A DNA stretch of 64,000 nt, taken from contig NC_043007.1 in NCBI RefSeq assembly GCF_006345805.1, positions 71,052,001 to 71,116,000 of the forward strand, in the 5' to 3' direction. The translations under genes and the position numbers were made by a program. The stretch comes from Octopus sinensis. Lineage: Eukaryota. The notes beneath the pieces are model-generated. The model was not told the origin of the DNA. It saw only the letters and a program-made list of their open reading frames with translations, and made no database searches. Within the stretch, counting starts at the first letter, position 1. The number at the start of each line of letters is the position of its first letter. Of the stretch, positions 2,831 to 60,780 are shown one piece after another.

Positions 2831-4386
2831 TTTGCCCTTAACCACTTGAGCATGCTCCTTTGTGGCTGACAATATGTGCATCTCTGATGATGAGCAAGGG
2901 TAGTGGGAGAGCATCAAAGCCATGTTTTGAGAGGGATTCCTTAGGGTTTAATAAATGTAATAAAAGCAAAGTTTGAAGGAAATATTAGCCATTTTTCATA
3001 CTTTCTAGGGGTAAGCAAATAGGGAATAACATTTGTTATCCTAAGACAAAAATCATGTAAAACAGTGTCGTTGGTAAGATGTGTTGGTGATTTGAGAGAA
3101 TTGTTGCTATATTTTTATTTTGAATTATTTTAGATTATTTTAAAAACATAACATAAAAACACAAATCTAAAATCAGTAAAAAAATTTAGAATGGAGCCCT
3201 ACCTTAGCATCATACTCACATTCCTTAGATTAATAACAATTTCTTACTTTTACACAGAATCACACACTTAAGGAATCCTATTATAGCACTCATGTTTTTC
3301 TCAGAACATGAATTAAGTACAAAAATAAATATGGATGTAACCGGCCTTGGATTATTATTCCCATCTTTGGAAAAGTGAAGCTTTCCAGTGATTAATATGT
3401 GAAAATTGTTCCAGAGAAAAGTTACATATTTAGGGGTAAAAAGAATAAATGAAACGAAAAAAAATCCCATTAATTCTTAATAGTCTACAATCATTCTCTT
3501 CATTATTTATTATATGTCCCTGTCTTTGCTTATTCTGTTATTGCCAAAATAATATTCTCCATTCTTTTGAAGTTATCTCCTCCACCTACCTCATCCTACA
3601 CTTCCCACAGCCAATATCTTGTCCCTTCATTCGATCCTTTATTAAGCTTTTGATCTTGCATTGTTTCACTACTTCATAAAGCATCATCATCATCATCAAG
3701 CTCTAGATATTGGTTTTGAGTTTTGGTACAAGGCCAGCAATTTTGGGAGGGGACTAGTTGATTACATCAACCCCAGTCCTCACCTGGTTCTTATTTAATC
3801 AACCCTGAAAGAATGAAAGGTAAAGTTACTTCAACAGAATTTGAACTCCAAATGAAATGTTGCTAAGTATTTTGCTTGGCATGCTAATGGCTCTGCTTGT
3901 CTGCTACATTCATTAAGTTTTAGGTATTACCATGCAATCCTGTTGACTAAATGCTCTGATTTTATTTACTAGATTCCAGTAATTTTCTTCAGGCCCAAAC
4001 AAAGTTTAACTTTAAAATGCTGGCCAATAGAAGATTTAGTGACGTCGTTGTACTTTTGTGTGTCTTAGTGAACTGCCATTGCGAGAATTTCAGATTGTGA
4101 CCCAAAGACACTAGACTGTGGTTGCAATGGATACTCTTTGGTTTCTGGTACAACACTAAAAAGCAAAAACAAATTCTGGTGCTCTGTGACTGTATAGTTT
4201 TGGTTCACATGTCATACGTAGGTACCAGAGAGAGAGAGAGAGAGTACACCTTTGCCCTTTAAAGTAGAGATACTGTATAACAAACAAATGATGTTTTATA
4301 CTGTTCAATTCAGATCTGGGAGAATCTTGACATATCCAAGTACAAAGCAGAAGAAATTAGTAGTGGTATATGTTATCAAATTATAA

Positions 4387-4709
4387 ATAGGCATAGGAGT
4401 GGCTGTGTGGTAAGTAGCTTGCTTACAAACCACATGGTTCCAGGCTCAGTCCAACTGCATGGCACCTTGGGCAAGTGTCTTCTACTATAGCCTCGGGCTG
4501 ACCAAAGCCTTGTGAGTGGATTTGGTAAATGGAAACTGAAAGATGCCTGTCGTATACAGGTATATATGTGTATATGTTTGTGTGTTGGTGTTTGTCCCCC
4601 CCCAACATCGCTTGACAACTGATGCTGGTGTGTTTACATCCCCATAACTTAGCGTTTCAGCAAAAGAGACCGATAGAATAAGTACTAGGCTTACAAAGAA
4701 TAAGTCCTG
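4387..4709 (+). mobile_element. SINE family B (ATAGGCGCAGGAGTGGCTGTGTGGTAAG head), 3' truncated
   Basis: Matches the copies at 30197, 37118, 38308, 49182, 52452 and 60387. Confidence 0.85.
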
Positions 4710-11770: not shown

Positions 11771-12399
11771 AGGTAGAAATACTGCCAGACTGTTACTGAT
11801 AATGATAGGAAATAGGAAATGGGTTTTAAGAATTTGGTAATCTTCAGAAACTTGGTTCTACAGGAACAAAAATACTTGATGATATATGAAAAATTGAAGT
11901 GATTGCCACTCATATTTTTACCCCTTTTCAAAACCAACATCAATATTTTACTATGGCATCATCTCATGCCATTCGTTCTGTTATTTATTTATCTAGTTCC
12001 TCACCCCCATCCCTCACTTCTGTTCACCCATGTGAAAACATCTGATTTATTGATACTTCATTGGTTGAAGCAATGTTCAATAAAAGATTTCTCAAAATTT
12101 CTCTAATTAATTATTCCTATTCTTGTTTTCCCCTTTTCAATACTTGGTAAAGAAATTGGTTTATTCTTCTTGCTTGAGACTCTTTGATGATTCTATACAA
12201 GGTCTGGTGCTAAACACTTTCTTGCTGTCTTTATCACTTTAATTCTGGTTTCATTTTTATAAATAATAGTAAAACTGAACATTTAATGTTTTTTGTTGTG
12301 TTTTATGAGGGGATTCAACTCCCAAGGGGTTTATTTTGAGATTAGATATTATTGCTTTACATTTAATATATACCACATTATTCTATAGTGAAGAACTTT

Positions 12400-12900
12400 T
12401 TCTTCTACCCTTCCCCACTGGGTATCTCCCTCTTCATCACCTTGTTCCTCCAGCCCCTCCCTTTGTCTATCTCCTCCATACCTTCATCTATTCTTCCTCC
12501 TCTTCCTTCTTCCTTGTTTTCTTTATCATTACTTCACCCTCCACCCTTTCATATACCCCACCGCTGTCTCACTTCGAACTTGTCTTTCTTTTTCCTTCTC
12601 TACTCCCTTTCTGTCTTGACCGAGTTCTTCTTCCATTCTTCCCCTTTACTCTACGTTTTTCTTCATTTCCTTCCCCTGCCCTTCTCTCACTCTCCACCCA
12701 TTCTCCTTTATTCACCTTTTTTTTTAAATACTCTCCACCCTCTTTTAGCTTCTCTTTCCCATCTTCAGTTGTTGTCTCACCTCCACCTCCATGTCACCAA
12801 TATTCCTCATTACAAATTCATACTGTCACCTTCAGACTGTTTCATTAAGCATCTCTTCTGTTCATCTCTCTCTCTCTCCAACTTCTCTATGTGGTACTAT
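12400..12900. repeat. Pyrimidine-rich (CT) low-complexity tract
   Basis: Directly visible; it explains the 170-aa and 193-aa spurious ORFs. Confidence 0.8.
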
Positions 12901-13960
12901 ATACACCTCCCTTGTTCATCCCCTGATACTTTCTCTTCTAGCGCTGATTGGTTTTCTGTCTATAACTAAGATGATCTCTCCTGACCATGTTCAGAAAATT
13001 CACCATAAACATTTTTGCTGCAGGAAATTTTGTCATAAAGGAGATACATCAGTAAACTGTAACCAAAATAAATAACTCATTTCAAGGAAGTTACCTTTCT
13101 CTAATTGTTAATATTAGTTGATGAAGTTGCCATCTTAAGAAAACAGATAATTTTTTTTTTTTTGCAATTATCATATTTTTATGGTGAATTTTCCTATAAA
13201 AAAAAATTTTCCGGTAAAATTTCCTATAATTCTCCTGACATTTCTCATTTGTTAGAACACAGCAACAATTGTCTCTCAAAAATCAGTCTTCCCATTCAAA
13301 ACCTGATAATACTTCAGACATGATCAGTTGCCGATTCTTCAGAAAACTCAAGTCAGAGTCACATCCAAAGAGTCACATCCCACCACCTAGCCTTCTCACT
13401 GACTGGCAAGGATTTTTCCACCAATACATTTCAATACTAACTTACAGATCACTATTTCCTCTCCTCTTCCTCTTCCCTTCTCTCACTCTCTGTTCCTCTC
13501 TCTCTTTGCTCCCCTCTCTCTCTGCCCCTCTCTCTCTGCTTCTCTTTCCTCTCTCTCTGCTTCTCTTTCCTCTCTCTCTGCTTCTCTCCCCTCTCTCTCA
13601 TATTGCTACTACATTGATAACCTCTCAACTAATTAGTTATCTTTTATCTTTTACATGTTTCAATCATTAGACTGTGGCCATGATGGGGCATCACCTCCGA
13701 GAATTTTTAGTCAAATGAATCAACTCAAGTACTTACTATTCTTTTCTTTTTAAGTCTGGAATTGAACAAACTGAACAGACTTATGATCACTGCTTGAACA
13801 CATTTGACCATAGATCAACTTAACAACTTGATCAAAGTTTTTACATGATAAATTAAATTTGCAATTGTTCCTCCTCCTCCTCCTCCTCCCTCTTCTTCTC
13901 ACTATCACATGTATTATCAGTCATCAGGGATGTTGTCTTGAGGTCCGGTCTCAAGTATCT

Positions 13961-17715: not shown

Positions 17716-17827
17716 GTATTTTTACGTAATTCTGTGTTTGAACCTTTGGAAGAACAGCGGCAGCAGTACCTGAGTGGCAAAGCTACAATTATACAGAAAA
17801 ACTGGCGTAGGTGTATAGCTCAAAAAA
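17716..17827 (+). CDS. Unconventional myosin exon: end of motor/converter plus IQ1 (VFLRNSVFEPLEEQRQQYLSGKATIIQKNWRRCIAQK)
   Basis: Polypyrimidine tract with TAG acceptor (17714-15) and GTAAGG donor (17828). 112 nt, phase 0 to phase 1. VFLR...LE..R...A..IQK.WR is the conserved myosin (GKTK)VFLR-IQ junction. Class (X/XXII-like) is inferred from recalled similarity. Confidence 0.92.
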
Positions 17828-29966: not shown

Positions 29967-30196
29967 ATGCCATCACCAATATCATTTTAACATCTACTTT
30001 TCCATACTTGCATAGATCAAATGGTGCAGATTTTCTTCAGCCAGATGCTCTTCTGCCATTTCTTAGCAATGTTATATTTCACCCAATACTTTAAACAATG
30101 AAAAATTCCATGTAAAACACCCACAAATGACTCCATGTCTCAAAACAAACAGCACCATTTATAGCATCTGTGACTTTCTTTGCAATTAGTACACAA

Positions 30197-30370
30197 ATAG
30201 GCGTAGGAATGGCTGCGTGGTAAGTAGCTTGCTTACAAACCACATGGTTCCGGGTTCAGTCCCACCGTGTGGCATCTTGGGCAAGTGTCTTCTACTATAC
30301 TCTCGGGCCGACCAAAGCCTTGTGAGTGGATTTGGTAGACGGAAACTGATAGAAGCGCGTCGTATATATG

Positions 30371-30411
<41 letters not shown>

Positions 30412-30612
30412 TTGTGTGTCTGTGTTTGTCCCCCTAGCATTACTTGACAACCGATGCTGGTGTGTTTATGTCCCTGTCACTAAGCAGTTTGGCAAAAGAG
30501 ACCAATAGCATAAGTACTAGGCTTACAAAGAATAAGTCCCAGGGTTGATTTGCTCGACTAAAGGCAGTGCCCCAGCATTGCCTCAGTAAAATGACTGAAA
30601 CAAGTAAAAGAG
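30197..30612 (+). mobile_element. SINE family B, full length
   Basis: Head, internal (TG)n and GTAAAAGAG tail. Confidence 0.9.
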
Positions 30613-35613: not shown

Positions 35614-35720
35614 AATATCTCCGTCAACGCTATGCAGTTATTATACTTCAAACAAATTACCGTTGCATTCGAGATCGTGTTCGGTTTGTTAAAAAGAAGA
35701 AAGCTGCCACCTTACTTCAG
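35614..35720 (+). CDS. Unconventional myosin exon: IQ2 and start of IQ3 (KYLRQRYAVIILQTNYRCIRDRVRFVKKKKAATLLQ)
   Basis: ctctctacAG acceptor (35612-13) and CAG|GTAAGA donor (35721). 107 nt, phase 1 to phase 0. Joins the 17716-17827 exon in frame (A+AA = Lys) and gives IQ motifs at about 23-aa spacing. Confidence 0.92.
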
Positions 35721-36101
35721 GTAAGACAACCCTTTCCTTTTACTAACTTCTCAATTTAAACAAGGCGCCATTTCAACTTTTGCATGTGATAATTGTGTCT
35801 TTGTTTATAACGACAAAGTAGCTGATGTTGGACTCATCGACTTATGGTTGCAAGGCATCATAATTGGTAGGTGCTAGTGCATGATTTATTTAGTGTACAC
35901 TGGATCATTGCAGACCAATGTTCAGAAACAACTCGTAATCAGAACTAGTGAACCAGATAATCATGATGCAAACTAAAATATTTGAAGATTCTTCTTTTGC
36001 TTTCTACAAGCATATATAGGGTACTTTGAACTGAGTACAGCAAGATAAGGGGATATTATAAATTATACAGTATTACAAATATTTTGTAGAAATGAACTTT
36101 T

Positions 36102-37117: not shown

Positions 37118-37514
37118 TTCTTTTACTTGTTTCAGTCATTTGACTGTGGCCATGCTGGAGCACCGCCTTTAGTCGAGCAACTCGACCCCAGGACTTATTC
37201 TTTGTAAGCCCAGTACTTATTCTATCGGTCTCTTTTTGCTGAACCGCTAAGTGACGGGGACATAAACACACCAGCATCGGTTGTCAAGCAATGCTAGGGG
37301 GACAAACACAGACACACAAACACACACACATATATATATACATATATACGACGGGCTTCTTTCAGTTTCCGTCTACCAAATCCACTCACAAGGCATTGGT
37401 CAGCCCGGGGCTATAGCAGAAGATACTTGCCCAAGGTGCCACGCAGTGGGACTGAACCCGGAACCATGTGGTTGGTTAGCAAGCTACTTACCACACAGCC
37501 ACTCCTGCGCCTAT
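37118..37514 (-). mobile_element. SINE family B, young full-length copy
   Basis: CpG-rich reverse-complement match to 30197-30612. Confidence 0.9.
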
Positions 37515-37524
37515 GTTCATCTAT

Positions 37525-37630
37525 TATTGCCATATTCAAAGAAGCAGAGGTTTAGAAAACATTCTCATGGAAGGAAGAGTTGACAGCAGTAGATCAAGAA
37601 GCAGGCAAAGAATGCAATGGATGGGACAAT
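37525..37630 (+). pseudogene. RTE-clade LINE ORF2 C-terminal relic
   Basis: YCHIQRSRGLENILMEGRVDSSRSRSRQRMQWM resembles the RTE end motif YFGH.MRR..SLEKTLMLGKIEGRRRRGRQRMRW. Confidence 0.7.
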
Positions 37631-38307
37631 ATCAAGAGCAGGTTGTGCAAGAGTAGCAAGGCAGTTGAAGAATTTGTGCTTAATCAGGAAGACTTTTTTG
37701 TAGTGTCATCAATGGGCTGCTGGCATATGACACATGGCGATGATGATTTCTCATCATAAGATTGTAAGAAAATTTCAAGAACTAGCTTAAAAGCTGCACT
37801 CTGTGTGGATTTTTAAACTAGCTACTTTTGAGGTCTAAATGGCCCTGCAGACCAAAACTAAACAGAGCTGTAATACATCTATAATGACTATATACCCCAA
37901 TGGCATTTAATCAGAGGTTAAGGAGGGGTGAGAATTAATTCTGTAATGCAATCATTCTATTGTTCTAGTCCCAAGTTGAATTCCAGCTGTTGGCCATTTT
38001 GTCCCAAAGTTCTTATGTTGACATAAAATTAATGAAGTGAATGTCATTTATCACCCTTGATCCCTGATGTCAACTAACAAACGCCAAGATGGCATGAATC
38101 AACCAAGCTTTACCTGCTAGAAATAGCAGCCCAAATACTTTTAAATCAGATCACAATGCTGAATATTCAAGACTCAAATGAAGGGCAGATTTTTGATCCT
38201 TGGATCATCCTGATTCCAAAAAGGTGTATGTCTATGTAAAGCAAATATAGATTGAGATACAGGGGCCCCAGGTGGACAAACAAGATTTTGCTTTTATTAT
38301 TATAGAA

Positions 38308-38673
38308 CTCTTTACTCTCTTGTACTCTTTTGCTTGTTTCATTCATTTGACTGTGGCCATGCTGGAGTACCATCTTTAGTCGAGCAAATTGACCCCAGGA
38401 CTTATTCTTTGTAAGCCTAGTACTTATTCTATCAGTCTCTTTTGCCGAACCACTAAGTTGTCAAGCAAAGTTTTGGGGGACAAACACAGACACTCACACA
38501 TACATATATATACATATATATGATGGGCTTCTTTCAGTTTCCGTCTACCAAATCCACTCACAGGGCTTTGGTTATAGTAGAAGACACTTGCCCAAGGTGC
38601 CACGCAGTGGGACTGAACCCAGAACCATGTGGTTGGTAAGCAAGCTACTTACCACACAGCCACTCCTGCGCCT
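38308..38673 (-). mobile_element. SINE family B with a small internal deletion
   Basis: Homology to 37118-37514. Confidence 0.85.
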
Positions 38674-39821
38674 GTTTTTTAATGATTAATTTATACACAT
38701 AACAGATAGGGTTTAGCGCTCATAACTGGTAATATATAAGAGGAAAACATGAATATATAGTTTAATGCACTGAAGAAAATCTGTAAAAAATCTCTTCTAC
38801 TGAAGCTGTAGCAGTTATTTGTTTGTGTTATAAATAATTTTTAGTGTTACAAAATAATTTCTCAGAAACAGCTCTGTAAACTAACCAAGTTTTTCAGTTC
38901 TACTTCTCCATTCTGGAGGAGTGTTGTTATTTTTAATGAATTACTTTCATTTAATCTTAATGATAAAATTACTGTAATTTTAGTCACCTTCTCTTTAAGT
39001 AGCAAATTATATGGAATCCATCAAACATGTTTGTGCAGGAATTCCAAATTAATTACTTTCAAATTTTAAAAATTATTTTAAACTGGTTAATACATTGCCT
39101 GACATAATATCAATGTTTTAATGTTTAGAATCAGTTACTGGGTCTTGATTTACCTTTTTCTTTTGTTCTTTCTTAACTGGAGGAAATGGTCTTATCTTTC
39201 ATATTTGTTTTGTGTCTGAAAGAAAAGATAGTTTTGCAGAAAGTTTTCTTTTTTTTTATTTCTTTTATTTTTTAAAGTTTGACAAGAGTGTTATTGACAA
39301 ATTAGAACATATATGTTACTTTCTGAAATAAATACTTCAATTTAATCTCTGATCCAAAATAAAGAAAATTAATAAAAATTAAAAAAAAAAAATATATTCA
39401 TGAAATATGTTATAATGGAATGTATTAGCTTTTGAGAAAGAAATTTCCAATTTCTTTCCAAACAAATCTCTCAAGTTTATATTTCAATGGGAAAGGAATT
39501 AGTTTTACTATTGAAAAATATATTCACCTGTAACATTAGCTGCCTTGAAATTGGTCATTGTATCAGTTAGATCGGAGATAAATTACTCTGGAATATATTG
39601 CTTGTAAAATACCTGCAATACGACACTTCACCTCCTCCATCAGCTGCCATCCTTCATCACTGCTAGCTATGATACCTTCTGCTAAGTGAAAAATGAAATT
39701 GGAAGCTACCTTCTGATTGGGTTTCATTGGCAGCTGACATTCTCAACACTGAACTGATATTGTCTGGAAGCAGTTTTCCAGTTCTTCTATCAGGCTCCAG
39801 TCTTAAGTAATTTGTATTCAG

Positions 39822-40134
39822 GCATGTTGGAAACTTACCAATGGTACATGGAAATGTTTCTGCATTCAGCTTTGTGCTGACCCAGCTGAATGACATGTTA
39901 AAGTGGGCGCTGCAAGCTGAGACTGACCGGCCAAAGCCATCATTGCCTTCCAAAGGATCATTGGTCAAAAAGAAAGCTAATAATGTTACAAGCGTCAACA
40001 AAGTTGTTACTTTTACTGAAACGTCATTTACTAACGAAGATGCACCTTCAGTGAAGAAAGCTTTCACTTTCACTGAAACCTCATTTCTTAGTGAAAATGC
40101 TGATGACTCAAGTGAAGATTCTGCAGAAGAGGAG
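39822..40134 (+). CDS. Probable coding exon (alternative first or cassette exon of the myosin, or a nested gene): ...MLKWALQAETDRPKPS...KVVTFTETSF...KAFTFTETSF...DSAEEE
   Basis: Open frame after the TAA at 39808-10. GAG|GTAAGA donor at 40135 (phase 0). A 57-nt/19-aa internal repeat differs mainly at synonymous positions. The 5' boundary is uncertain: AG acceptors give starts at 39822, 39870 or 39886, and there is an ATG at 39841. Confidence 0.6.
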
Positions 40135-40984
40135 GTAAGAGTTTGCTAACACTTGAATCACTTACTAATGACCTACTTGTAACAAACTATTTTGTTTTTT
40201 GTAACCAGAGACATCTATTTCATCTCTTAAAATCAATCAAAGCAAATATTTTGACAAAATAATTAAGAAGAAGCAAAAAGTGAAAATTTTAAGTGAAAGC
40301 CATCAGTTTAATTCTAAACAGAACTACAAATTAATATTTTGAATATTTTAATTTTATTTTCAATCTCCTTTATTTTGTATTTCAAAATTTCATAAATAGG
40401 ATATTAAAATTACTGTGACACTGCAGCAGCTATTAAATAATAAATATTTTCTAATCATTTAATTTAACAAACTACTTTAGTTGTCATAATCTGCAATAAC
40501 ATACAAACTAATATCATCTCAGTCATAAAAGTTTACATTTGCTATTTTGGTTATATTTGAAAATTCTACTGACAAAACACACATTAAACACAATATAAAT
40601 ATATATTATATAAATATTTACGATACATATATACACTCTGCAATTTATATGTTTGTTCTACCTGTATATTTATACAGTACATGTCAAATACACAAGTTAA
40701 ATATGTGAGGAATGTTAGAGAATGTTTAGTAAGAAATTTTTTTAAAATGTAGCTTTAATCATTCAAAACTGAAAAATTTCTAAATAGAGGGATTAATGCT
40801 GTATAATTATTGGTATTTAAAACGCAGTGTTCTTGGAGTTTTTGTTGAATTTTGCTCCTTCTTCATCAACAGTAAACAGGTGGTAAACAGTAAACAGATC
40901 TACAGGAAGTTATTAAAGGCTTGCAAGTCTAAGAAAAAATAGCTTGTATTACAATAGTGACCATCTATATGTATGTCACTCTAT

Positions 40985-41011
40985 CTACCCCATTCTCTAT
41001 CTACCTCTCTC

Positions 41012-41071
<60 letters not shown>

Positions 41072-52190: not shown

Positions 52191-52911
52191 GCAATTCTTT
52201 AGTCCTGCTTTAGACCTAGACATGCACAACAACAAAGATGGTAGGCATTCTCAATTGTTATGTGTTCTGGAAATTGAAGGATCATAGGGAATAGTGAGAT
52301 GTAAGATCTTTCTAACTCATACTGGCATAGGAAAACGGAGGTAAAATACTGATGAGCATGATAATGCATGCATTTATGTATGTACATATATGCATGATTA
52401 TAGACACATATATATAAAATAAGACTGGCCTTTTGTATTAACAGATATAAATTTTACTCTTTTACTCTTACTTGTTTGAGCCATTTGACTGTGGCCATGC
52501 TGGAGCACCGCCTTCAGTAGAGTAAATCGAACCCAGGACTTATTCTTTGTAAGCCTAGTACTTATTCTATCGGTCTCTTTTGCCGAACCGCTAAGTTACG
52601 GGGACATAAACACACCAGCATCAGTTGTCAAGCGATGTTGGGGGGAGAAACAGACACACAAACACACACAACACATATATACATATACATATATACGATG
52701 GGCTTCTTTTCAGTTTCTGTCTACCAAATACACTCAGAAGGCTTTAGTCGACCCGAGGCCATAGTAGAAGACACTTGCCCAAGGTGCCACGCAGTGGGAC
52801 TGAACACAGAACCATGTGGTTGGTAAGCAAGTGACTTACCACACAGCCACTCCTGCGCCTATTTGTAAATAATATTTTGAATATCATAAAAAGAAACAAT
52901 AAAATAGCATT

Positions 52912-60386: not shown

Positions 60387-60780
60387 CATAGGAGTGGCTG
60401 TGTGGTAAGTAGCTTGCTAACCAACCACATGGTTCCAGGTTCAGTTCCACTGCGTGGCATCTTGGGCAAGTGTCTTCTGCTATAGCCCCGGGCCGACCAA
60501 TGCCTTGTGAGTGGATTTGGTAGACGGAAACTGAAAGAAACCTGTCGTATATATGTATATATATATATATGTATATGTGCGTGTGTCTGTGTTTGTCCCC
60601 CTAGCATTGCTTGACAACCGATGCTGGTGTGTTTAAATCCCCGTCACTTAGCGGTTCGGCAAAAGAGACCGAAAGAATAAGTACTGGGCTTACAAAGAAT
60701 AGGTCCCGGGGTCGATTTGCTCGACTAAAGGCAGTGCTCCAGCATGGCCGCAGTCAAATGACTGAAACAAGTAAAAGAAT
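60387..60780 (+). mobile_element. SINE family B, young full-length copy
   Basis: CpG-rich; homology to 30197-30612. Confidence 0.9.

What the first reader, a model, noticed from the sequence alone, without database searches (positions are those of the whole stretch)
39600..40140. Intronic exon that could start a headless (motor-less) myosin isoform or be a cassette inserted into IQ3
Seen: a unique, non-repeat open frame with a strong phase-0 donor (GAG|GTAAGA, 40135), 4.1 kb after the IQ exon, which also ends in phase 0 in the middle of IQ3 (...AATLLQ). Its peptide does not continue the IQ motif. Upstream lie an in-frame ATG (39841), a CCAAT-type motif (CTGATTGG, about 39713) and CAGCTG E-boxes (39641, 39731). 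Two models fit. (a) It is an alternative first exon spliced to the same downstream acceptor, giving a tail-only protein; a headless isoform from an intronic promoter is established for mammalian MYO10. (b) It is a symmetric 249-nt cassette from the AG at 39884-85, which would break IQ3. I found no IQ3-completing exon in the window, so the host connection is inference.
Basis: partly seen in the sequence, partly recalled or inferred. Interest (0 to 1): 0.75.

Follow-up and report, generated by a model that had tools for sequence, protein, structure and literature searches.

The report
Conserved extra exon inside myosin intron
A real, evolutionarily conserved protein-coding exon with its own start codons and a highly conserved upstream block sits in the intron that splits the third IQ motif of a myosin-X-like gene; it most likely starts a motor-less isoform, but no transcript data could be reached to prove the link.

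Summary
The open frame alone is unremarkable. Conservation makes it real. Against a close relative, dN/dS is 0.075. Against a distant relative, 35 of 39 core residues are identical with most third codon positions changed, and the phase-0 GTAAG donor and both in-frame ATGs (39841, 39895) are kept.

New: the 480 bp at 39420-39900 is 98.3% identical to the close relative, against 83-90% in the flanks and 93% in the rest of the exon. It holds the densest CCAAT/ATTGG cluster in the window and is partly alignable in the distant species.

The phase-0 acceptor needed for the 249-nt cassette (39884-85) is not conserved in position. The only positionally conserved AG (39820-21) is out of phase with the IQ exon. 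A spliced transcript from another species joins IQ3 directly (…LQ|AHVRK…) without this exon.

The peptide has no homologues among 1.84 billion representative proteins beyond the two relatives.

Best reading (about 0.5): a start-codon-bearing 5' exon of an intron-initiated transcript spliced into the myosin tail. Cassette, nested gene and poison-exon readings remain open. Linkage to the myosin is inference.

The parts
17716..17827 (+). Host gene exon: end of the motor/converter and IQ1 (VFLRNSVFEPLEEQRQQYLSGKATIIQKNWRRCIAQK), ending in phase 1
   Evidence: 65% identical to the spliced transcript P0002.
35624..35721 (+). Host gene exon: IQ2 and the first half of IQ3 (…YLRQRYAVIILQTNYRCIRDRVRFVKKKKAATLLQ), with donor CAG|GTAAGA in phase 0
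   Evidence: 75% identical to P0002.
39420..39840 (+). Highly conserved non-coding block directly upstream of the ORF; candidate promoter and 5' leader, or a splicing-regulatory element or enhancer
   Evidence: 98.3% identical to the close relative L006 (7 mismatches and 1 indel in 421 nt), against 83-90% in the flanks. 39610-39840 aligns with the distant L001. Indels are not multiples of 3, and all + frames contain stops. It holds 6 CCAAT/ATTGG sites (39447, 39550, 39698, 39716, 39726, 39838), the maximum for the whole window.
39818..39845 (+). 28-bp block TCAGGCATGTTGGAAACTTACCAATGGT. It contains the only positionally conserved AG (39820-21), a conserved upstream ATG (39824), a CCAAT box and the first in-frame ATG (39841)
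   Evidence: 26 of 28 bases identical in the distant L001, against 78% in the coding core. Unique in the window. Details.
39824..39880 (+). Short overlapping upstream ORF (18 codons; 13 in L001), ending just before the second in-frame ATG
   Evidence: The ATG and the arrangement are conserved in L001; the peptide is not.
39841..40134 (+). Coding part of the exon (98 codons from ATG 39841; a second conserved in-frame ATG lies at 39895, giving 80 codons)
   Evidence: dN/dS is 0.075 against L006, with 12 of 17 differences at codon position 3. The ORF, both ATGs and the donor are conserved in L001. The antisense ORF is broken by stops in L001.
39884..39885 (+). Phase-0 AG that would make the 249-nt cassette
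   Evidence: Present in the window and L006. Not positionally conserved in L001, where the homologous AG is at codon position 3.
39994..40100 (+). Tandem 57-nt (19-aa) duplication encoding V(N/K)K(V/A)(V/F)TFTETSF…, the most conserved part of the peptide
   Evidence: 76% nucleotide identity between copies. Both copies are kept in L001. AF2 models them as the two strands of a beta-hairpin, residues 51-64 and 71-84 (shallow alignment).
40135..40140 (+). 5' splice site GTAAGA (phase 0)
   Evidence: Conserved as AAG|GTAAGG, also phase 0, in L001. Conservation falls to background immediately downstream.

Best explanation
This is a conserved, lineage-restricted, protein-coding 5' exon that carries its own start codon (39841 or 39895). 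It belongs to a transcript that begins inside the intron splitting IQ3 of a class-X-like myosin gene.

The 420-480 bp just upstream would serve as its promoter and 5' leader. That block is near-identical in a close relative, partly alignable in a distant one, and rich in CCAAT boxes.

The exon is spliced from its phase-0 donor at 40134. The IQ exon's donor at 35721 has the same phase, so both can use the same downstream acceptor, which is the IQ3-completing exon lying beyond the window. The product would be a motor-less protein.

The unique N-terminus would consist of a predicted helix, a basic linker, a beta-hairpin made by two 19-aa repeats, and an acidic Ser/Glu tail. It would be fused to the rest of the neck and tail.

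Shown: the exon is real, coding and under purifying selection. The donor, its phase and both ATGs are conserved. The upstream block is under strong constraint.

Inferred: the transcription start, the use of the ATG, the splice partner, and any scaffold or dominant-negative role.
For: - Coding constraint: dN/dS is 0.075 against L006. The core is 35/39 amino acids identical to L001, with 20 of 26 differences at third positions.
- Donor: GTAAG in phase 0 is conserved in both relatives, the same phase as the IQ exon donor.
- Start codons: both in-frame ATGs are conserved.
- Upstream block: 39420-39900 is 98.3% identical, against 83-90% in the flanks and 93.2% in the rest of the exon. The downstream intron is at background.
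- CCAAT/ATTGG: 6 sites in 440 bp, against a window mean of 0.89, and no other position in the window reaches 6. L001 has 7 sites in the 555 bp before its ATG.
- Composition: 36-41% GC in a 25% GC surround.
- Homologous transcript: the spliced L005/P0002 joins LQ|AHVRK directly, so the exon is not a constitutive part of the neck.
- Host identity: the motor end on L005 best matches myosin-X (6e-64, against 2e-49 for myosin-XV).
- Precedent: intron-initiated headless Myo10 in mouse (PMC5725431).
Against: - No transcript, CAGE or junction evidence could be reached. All contigs carrying the exon (L001-L004, L006-L015) are colinear with genomic DNA.
- The downstream partner exon is not in the window.
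- A conserved AG at 39820-21, preceded by a conserved CTYAAGT and a pyrimidine-rich stretch, looks like a 3' splice site. The exon may therefore be internal, with an unseen upstream 5' exon.
- The first ATG has a weak -3 base (C) and is preceded by a conserved out-of-frame ATG.
- The ATG at 39841 lies inside a CCAAT box, so its conservation need not reflect initiation.
- A conserved flanking intron is also typical of regulated cassette exons.
- A phase match has a 1-in-3 chance.
Confidence: 0.5

Rival explanations
1. It is an in-frame alternative cassette exon of the full-length myosin. It would be spliced between the IQ2/IQ3a exon and the IQ3b exon through the phase-0 AG at 39884-85 (249 nt, 83 aa). 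This would insert a helix, linker, hairpin and acidic segment and abolish IQ3.
For: - Acceptor and donor are both phase 0 and the length is divisible by 3.
- The distant species also offers a strong phase-0 acceptor, at L001:525, giving 318 nt.
- A highly conserved upstream intron is a hallmark of regulated cassette exons.
- The exon is absent from the one homologous mRNA, as an alternative exon would be.
Against: - The phase-0 acceptors in the two lineages are not homologous positions. The homologous AG in L001 is out of phase.
- Phase-0 AGs are expected by chance in about 30 open codons.
- The joined sequence ...AATLLQ|LNDMLKWALQ lacks the R/G/R positions of an IQ motif. An 83-aa largely disordered insert would interrupt the lever arm before the ER/K helix.
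- The downstream intron shows no extra conservation.
- Conservation of the two ATGs is left unexplained.
Confidence: 0.18
2. It is the first coding exon of an independent gene nested in the myosin intron on the same strand. It would be spliced to its own downstream exons and have nothing to do with the myosin protein.
For: - It has its own conserved ATGs, a promoter-like conserved block and a donor.
- The peptide has no similarity to any myosin, Pfam family or other protein.
- The intron is at least 28 kb long, leaving room for more exons.
Against: - No other convincing + strand coding exon is visible in 40.1-64 kb. The ORFs there look like AT-rich noise, and the two other AGGTAAG sites have no ORF behind them.
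- The donor phase equals that of the host exon, which this model does not require.
- This is my own prior, not a result of a search run here: same-strand nested genes are rarer than alternative first exons.
Confidence: 0.12
3. It is an internal exon entered through the conserved AG at 39820-21. If entered from the myosin IQ exon (phase 0), the frame shifts and stops at 39891-93. That would give a tail-less motor-plus-2.5-IQ product with about 23 extra residues, or an NMD 'poison' isoform that regulates myosin level. If entered after an unseen exon ending in phase 2, the ORF would simply continue.
For: - It is the only positionally conserved AG, with a conserved CTYAAGT 14-19 nt upstream and a 28-bp block spanning the junction.
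- The shifted frame stops after 23 codons in the window and 22 in L001 (my translation of the sequences).
Against: - This does not explain the strong amino-acid-level constraint on the frame-1 core or the conserved phase-0 donor.
- No conserved exon lies in 38790-39419, which is at neutral-like 87-90%.
- The homologous mRNA has no extra residues between LQ and AHVRK.
Confidence: 0.1
4. It is not an exon. It would be a chance open frame next to a conserved non-coding element such as an enhancer, a structured RNA or an RNA-editing complement.
For: - ORF length alone is not significant.
- The upstream block folds somewhat better than shuffles (z -2.67, against -1.39 for a control flank).
- No expressed sequence was found.
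Against: - The codon-position pattern and dN/dS of 0.075.
- Most synonymous positions changed with 90% amino-acid identity in the core against the distant species.
- A conserved in-phase GTAAG donor.
- No Rfam match.
Confidence: 0.04

Closest known systems
Mammalian 'headless' Myo10 (Sousa et al. 2006 and Raines et al. 2012, as summarised in PMC5725431)
   Same: A transcript initiating inside an intron of a myosin-X gene and spliced into the downstream constitutive exons. It yields a protein without a working motor that keeps the tail.
   Different: - The mouse start sites are in intron 19, inside the motor domain. The specific exon is entirely 5' UTR, translation starts at M644, and all three IQ motifs are retained.
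- Here the exon lies in the IQ3 intron and is coding (80-98 unique, conserved residues). The product would lack the whole motor, IQ1, IQ2 and half of IQ3.
- No sequence homology exists between the two exons. If real, this is an independent origin.
Alternatively spliced neck exons of class I myosins (Myo1b/myr1 isoforms with 4, 5 or 6 IQ motifs; cited from general knowledge, not checked here)
   Same: Alternative exons inserted in the light-chain-binding neck of an unconventional myosin.
   Different: Those cassettes add whole IQ units and keep the lever arm continuous. This exon would cut an IQ motif in two and insert non-IQ, largely disordered sequence.
TATA-less promoters with multiple CCAAT boxes bound by NF-Y (general knowledge)
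   Same: A cluster of CCAAT/ATTGG pentamers in both orientations within a few hundred bp upstream of a first coding exon. The cluster is conserved as a property in two lineages.
   Different: No transcription start, NF-Y binding or flanking-consensus test is available. Only one box (39838) is conserved base for base in the distant species, and it overlaps the ATG.

Membership tests
Class X myosin (host gene) | Motor domain most similar to myosin-X | tested here: inconclusive
   The window holds no motor exon. The homologous spliced transcript L005 is 65-75% identical to the window's two IQ exons. It carries a motor C-terminus whose best PDB match is myosin-X at 6.1e-64, followed by myosin-XV at 2e-49 and myosin-VIIa at 3.9e-45. 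Orthology of L005 to the window gene is inferred.
Class X myosin (host gene) | Three IQ motifs followed by a single alpha-helix (ER/K) segment | tested here: inconclusive
   IQ1, IQ2 and the first half of IQ3 are in the window. IQ3b and the ER/K-rich segment are seen only in P0002 and are not in the window.
Class X myosin (host gene) | Tail with PH domains and MyTH4-FERM | tested here: inconclusive
The probe's accuracy is not guaranteed, and the tail exons probably lie outside the window.
Headless-type (intron-initiated, motor-less) myosin isoform | Transcription start inside an intron of the myosin gene | not testable with these tools
   Only indirect evidence: a 98.3% conserved upstream block and a CCAAT cluster. 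No CAGE or RNA data are accessible.
Headless-type (intron-initiated, motor-less) myosin isoform | Specific first exon spliced in frame to downstream constitutive myosin exons | tested here: inconclusive
   The donor phase (0) equals that of the IQ exon donor, and this is conserved. The acceptor exon is not in the window and no junction was observed.
Headless-type (intron-initiated, motor-less) myosin isoform | As in mouse: the specific exon is non-coding, and the protein keeps the neck (all IQs) | tested here: not met
   The exon is coding under purifying selection and lies downstream of IQ1 and IQ2. Compare PMC5725431.
Symmetric in-frame cassette exon | Acceptor and donor in the same phase, compatible with flanking exons and conserved between species | tested here: inconclusive
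   Phase 0-0 units exist in both lineages (249 nt and 318 nt) but use non-homologous AGs. The homologous AGs are out of phase.
Known protein domain families (Pfam, PDB) | Significant profile match of the exon peptide | tested here: not met
   No Pfam family at E <= 1 for the window peptide. Best PDB hit E = 0.55. Among 1.84e9 representatives, only the two relatives and one spurious repeat match.

The most novel reading that the evidence does not exclude
Some cephalopods make a tail-only myosin-X-like protein from a highly conserved promoter inside the IQ3 intron. Its lineage-specific N-terminal module is a duplicated TFTETSF beta-hairpin plus an acidic tail. This module would replace the motor and most of the lever arm and give the tail a new binding or regulatory function. 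It would be an origin of a 'headless' myosin-X independent of the vertebrate one.
Probability: 0.4. Interest if true: 0.6.

Novelty: new variant of a known kind. Interest (0 to 1): 0.5.

Why it matters
If the exon starts a tail-only isoform, motor-less myosin-X forms would have arisen independently in molluscs and vertebrates. That would argue that a free MyTH4-FERM/PH tail has a recurrent cellular use, for example as a scaffold or an antagonist of the full-length motor.

The duplicated, strongly conserved TFTETSF motif would be a new short module worth testing for partners.

The 480-bp block that is more conserved than the adjacent coding sequence is a concrete candidate for a conserved regulatory element in genomes where such elements are poorly mapped.

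If it is instead a cassette that breaks IQ3, it would be an unusual way of altering a lever arm.

Tried and rejected
1. Antisense ORF 39663-40073 (136 aa, no stops, dN/dS 0.18 against L006). Rejected because it has several stops in L001. Its low dN/dS is the usual echo of the sense frame.
2. IQ3-completing or ER/K exon in the window. tblastn with P0002 and with its tail alone found nothing. The ORF survey of 35.8-64 kb shows no ER/K-rich frame.
3. Myosin-X tail exons in the window. A from-memory human probe found nothing significant.
4. Known RNA or tRNA. No Rfam family reaches threshold. The only hit is a mir-84-like match at E = 0.46, 300 nt downstream on the other strand. No tRNA was found.
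5. Long dsRNA between the upstream block and the exon, as an RNA-editing complement. No long inverted repeat was found. The fold z-score of -2.5 to -2.7 is only modest.
6. Repeat or transposon origin. The region is unique in the window, and the peptide has no homologues in the 1.84e9 representative proteins beyond the two relatives.
7. Transcripts containing the exon. Two word-indexed searches and one exhaustive profile search returned only unspliced genomic ORFs. The collection holds only one spliced homologue of the host gene (P0002), so this absence says little.
8. Species or library type of the Logan runs. The accession numbers appear in no paper searched.
9. P0006 starting at the second ATG. 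This is a gene-caller choice; the first ATG is intact in L011.
10. The bacterial promoter and terminator scan is not applicable to a eukaryote.

Full report
**Observation**

The window is AT-rich (about 35% GC) and repeat-rich, with long introns. On the + strand it carries two exons of a myosin neck.
- Exon 17716-17827 encodes VFLRNSVFEPLEEQRQQYLSGKATIIQKNWRRCIAQK and ends in phase 1.
- Exon 35624-35721 encodes (K)YLRQRYAVIILQTNYRCIRDRVRFVKKKKAATLLQ, with donor CAG|GTAAGA in phase 0.

The flagged frame is open from 39811 to 40146. It has an ATG at 39841 and a second in-frame ATG at 39895. It ends at GAG|GTAAGA, with GT at 40135-36, also in phase 0.

The cited CTGATTGG (39713-20) and CAGCTG sites (39641, 39731) are present. 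The AG at 39884-85 gives a 249-nt phase 0-0 unit. The region has no other copy in the window.

**Is it more than chance?**

Length alone is not. A first-order Markov model of the window gives 3.25 open frames of at least 112 codons per 64 kb. Other measures are clear:
- AGGTAAG occurs only four times on the + strand. Two of these are the IQ exon donor and this donor, and the other two have no frame behind them.
- The exon (41% GC) and the 420 bp upstream of it (36%) stand out from flanks of 24-26%.

The decisive evidence is comparative. A protein search returned two unspliced genomic ORFs from public read assemblies.
- P0001 (loci L006-L010) is colinear with window 38786-41015 at 87% nucleotide identity.
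- P0003 (loci L001-L004, later L011-L015) comes from a much more distant relative.

Against L006, the 98 codons differ at 17 sites, 12 of them at third positions. There are 13 synonymous and 4 non-synonymous codon changes, giving dN/dS of 0.075. All other frames give about 1.2 or more, except the antisense frame that shares wobble positions. That antisense frame is interrupted by stops in L001.

Against L001, the core NNVTSVNKVVTFTETSF..ED.PSVKKAFTFTETSFLSE is 35/39 identical, while 20 of 26 nucleotide differences are at third positions. L001 keeps both ATGs, the open frame and a phase-0 donor AAG|GTAAGG. This is a real + strand coding exon under purifying selection.

**The new feature: the upstream block**

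Between the window and L006, identity by segment is as follows.

| Segment | Identity |
|---|---|
| 38790-39419 | 87-90% |
| 39420-39840 | 98.3% |
| 39841-39900 | 98.3% |
| Rest of the exon | 93.2% |
| Downstream of the donor | 88%, then 83% |

The 480 bp before and at the start of the ORF are therefore more conserved than the coding sequence.
- The block is non-coding. All + frames carry stops, and its indels against L001 are not multiples of three.
- From about 39610 onward it aligns with L001.
- A 28-bp stretch, TCAGGCATGTTGGARAYTTACCAATGGT (39818-39845), matches at 26 of 28 bases. The coding core matches at only 78%.
- The block holds six CCAAT/ATTGG pentamers in 440 bp. The window mean is 0.89, and no other position in 64 kb reaches six. 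L001 has seven in the 555 bp before its ATG.
- It has no Rfam match and only a modest folding z-score of -2.67, against -1.39 for a control flank.

**Host gene and the canonical splice**

A third hit, P0002 (locus L005), is a spliced transcript from another species. It reads …VFLRNSVFEPLE…IQ1…IQ2…FVKRKKAAIRLQ|AHVRKIIAQRLASNLREQKRLEEERLRHEQLEQERLEREQE…. It is 65% and 75% identical to the window's two IQ exons.

The motor C-terminus on the same contig matches myosin-X best, at 6.1e-64. Myosin-XV follows at 2e-49.

The intron after 35721 therefore splits IQ3 between Q and A. In that mRNA the exon studied here is absent. The IQ3b/ER/K exon is not in the window, so the intron is at least 28 kb long.

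**Which acceptor?**

One search lists every AG. The phase-0 AG at 39884-85 needed for the 249-nt cassette has no homologue in phase in L001. There the aligned AG falls at codon position 3.

L001 does have a different, strong phase-0 AG 33 nt upstream of its ATG, giving a 318-nt unit. The corresponding stretch in the window is closed by a TAA at 39808.

The only AG conserved at the same place is 39820-21, inside the 28-bp block. It is preceded by a conserved CTYAAGT. An exon starting at 39822 is out of phase with the IQ exon. Joined to 35721, it would stop after 23 codons (22 in L001).

The block also carries a conserved out-of-frame ATG at 39824. Its short ORF ends just before the second in-frame ATG in both lineages.

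**The peptide**

- It matches no Pfam family and no PDB relative.
- An exhaustive profile search of 1.84 billion representatives found only the two relatives and a spurious repeat.
- It contains a 57-nt tandem duplication, 39994-40043 and 40051-40100.
- AlphaFold2 with only three sequences gave mean pLDDT 67. It models a helix (residues 5-28), a disordered basic linker, and a two-stranded hairpin formed by the two repeats (51-64 and 71-84, pLDDT about 87-89), followed by the acidic tail. This is a hint, not a result.

**Weighing the models**

An exon carrying its own start codon, in a transcript born inside the intron, explains the most observations:
- the conserved ATGs;
- strong constraint upstream only;
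- the CCAAT cluster;
- the GC island;
- absence from the canonical mRNA;
- the donor phase equal to that of the IQ exon, which lets both use one acceptor.

I put this at about 0.5. That figure includes the variant in which a short unseen 5' exon is spliced to 39822.

The cassette (0.18) is possible in phase in both lineages, but only through non-homologous acceptors, and it would destroy IQ3 and interrupt the lever arm. A nested independent gene (0.12) does not need the phase match, and no partner exon is visible in the window. A frame-shifting inclusion giving a poison or tail-less product (0.10) fits the conserved AG and the extreme non-coding conservation, but not the protein-level constraint. 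A non-exon reading (0.04) is contradicted by the codon pattern and the donor.

**Comparison with what is known**

Mouse headless Myo10 arises from start sites in intron 19. Its specific exon is entirely 5' UTR, translation starts at M644, and the neck and tail are unchanged (PMC5725431).

The present case would work in a similar way, as an intron-initiated motor-less product. It fails the specific features: the exon is coding, it lies after IQ2, and it shares no sequence with the mouse exon. It would be a separate invention.

**Limits**

- No RNA evidence was reachable. Every contig with the exon is unspliced genomic-type sequence.
- The protein collection contains only one spliced homologue of the host gene, so the lack of spliced hits is uninformative.
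- The species behind the window and the read sets could not be identified.

Noticed in passing
window 39420-39900: A 480-bp block is 98.3% identical to the close relative, while the adjacent coding sequence is 93% and the flanks 83-90%. It holds the densest CCAAT/ATTGG cluster of the whole window (6 sites).
   Followed up: yes
window 39851 (L006:1091): The single difference in the first 60 nt of the ORF is a non-synonymous G (window, Gly) versus A (relative, Glu). An A/G difference in an otherwise near-invariant stretch could be a hard-wired RNA-editing site. This is pure speculation.
   Followed up: no
window 39824-39880; L001 541-582: A conserved out-of-frame upstream ATG lies 17 nt before the first in-frame ATG. 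Its short ORF ends 15 nt (window) or 2 nt (L001) before the second in-frame ATG (MLKW…). This hints that 39895 may be the real start, or that translation is regulated.
   Followed up: partly
window, e.g. 4385-4709, 30195-30557, 37173-37512, 38380-38700, 52520-52873, 60390-60724: A SINE-like element of about 320-360 bp with an internal (CATA/TATA)n microsatellite gives 18 blastn matches (the query copy and fragments included), in both orientations. About 27% of the window is intra-window repeat.
   Followed up: partly
L005 560-680 and 1234-1236: On the spliced myosin transcript contig, the motor reading frame is broken near an A-run (about 563-572). An in-frame stop follows …FRDRKSVV, two bases before the contig end. 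Possible causes are an assembly error, a retained intron or an alternative 3' end. This was not resolved.
   Followed up: no
window 12300-13700: A strongly strand-skewed CT-rich low-complexity tract has GC skew of -0.45 and gives long spurious open frames.
   Followed up: no
window 40415-40487 (-): A weak mir-84-like covariance-model hit scores 18.8 bits (E = 0.46), far below the gathering score of 60. It is probably chance.
   Followed up: no
window 37480-37756: Open frames here contain motifs such as …SRSRSRQRMQWM…. From memory, I thought these might be the C-terminal end of a retroelement ORF; this was not tested. They lie next to a SINE-like copy in the same intron.
   Followed up: no
L006-L010; L001/L011/L012: The five contigs of the close relative differ at 8 SNPs, none inside 39420-39900 and one in the exon (about 40005). 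In the distant lineage, the 28-bp block itself varies at two positions (GTTGGAG, GTCGGAG, GTCAGAG), so it is not absolutely fixed.
   Followed up: partly
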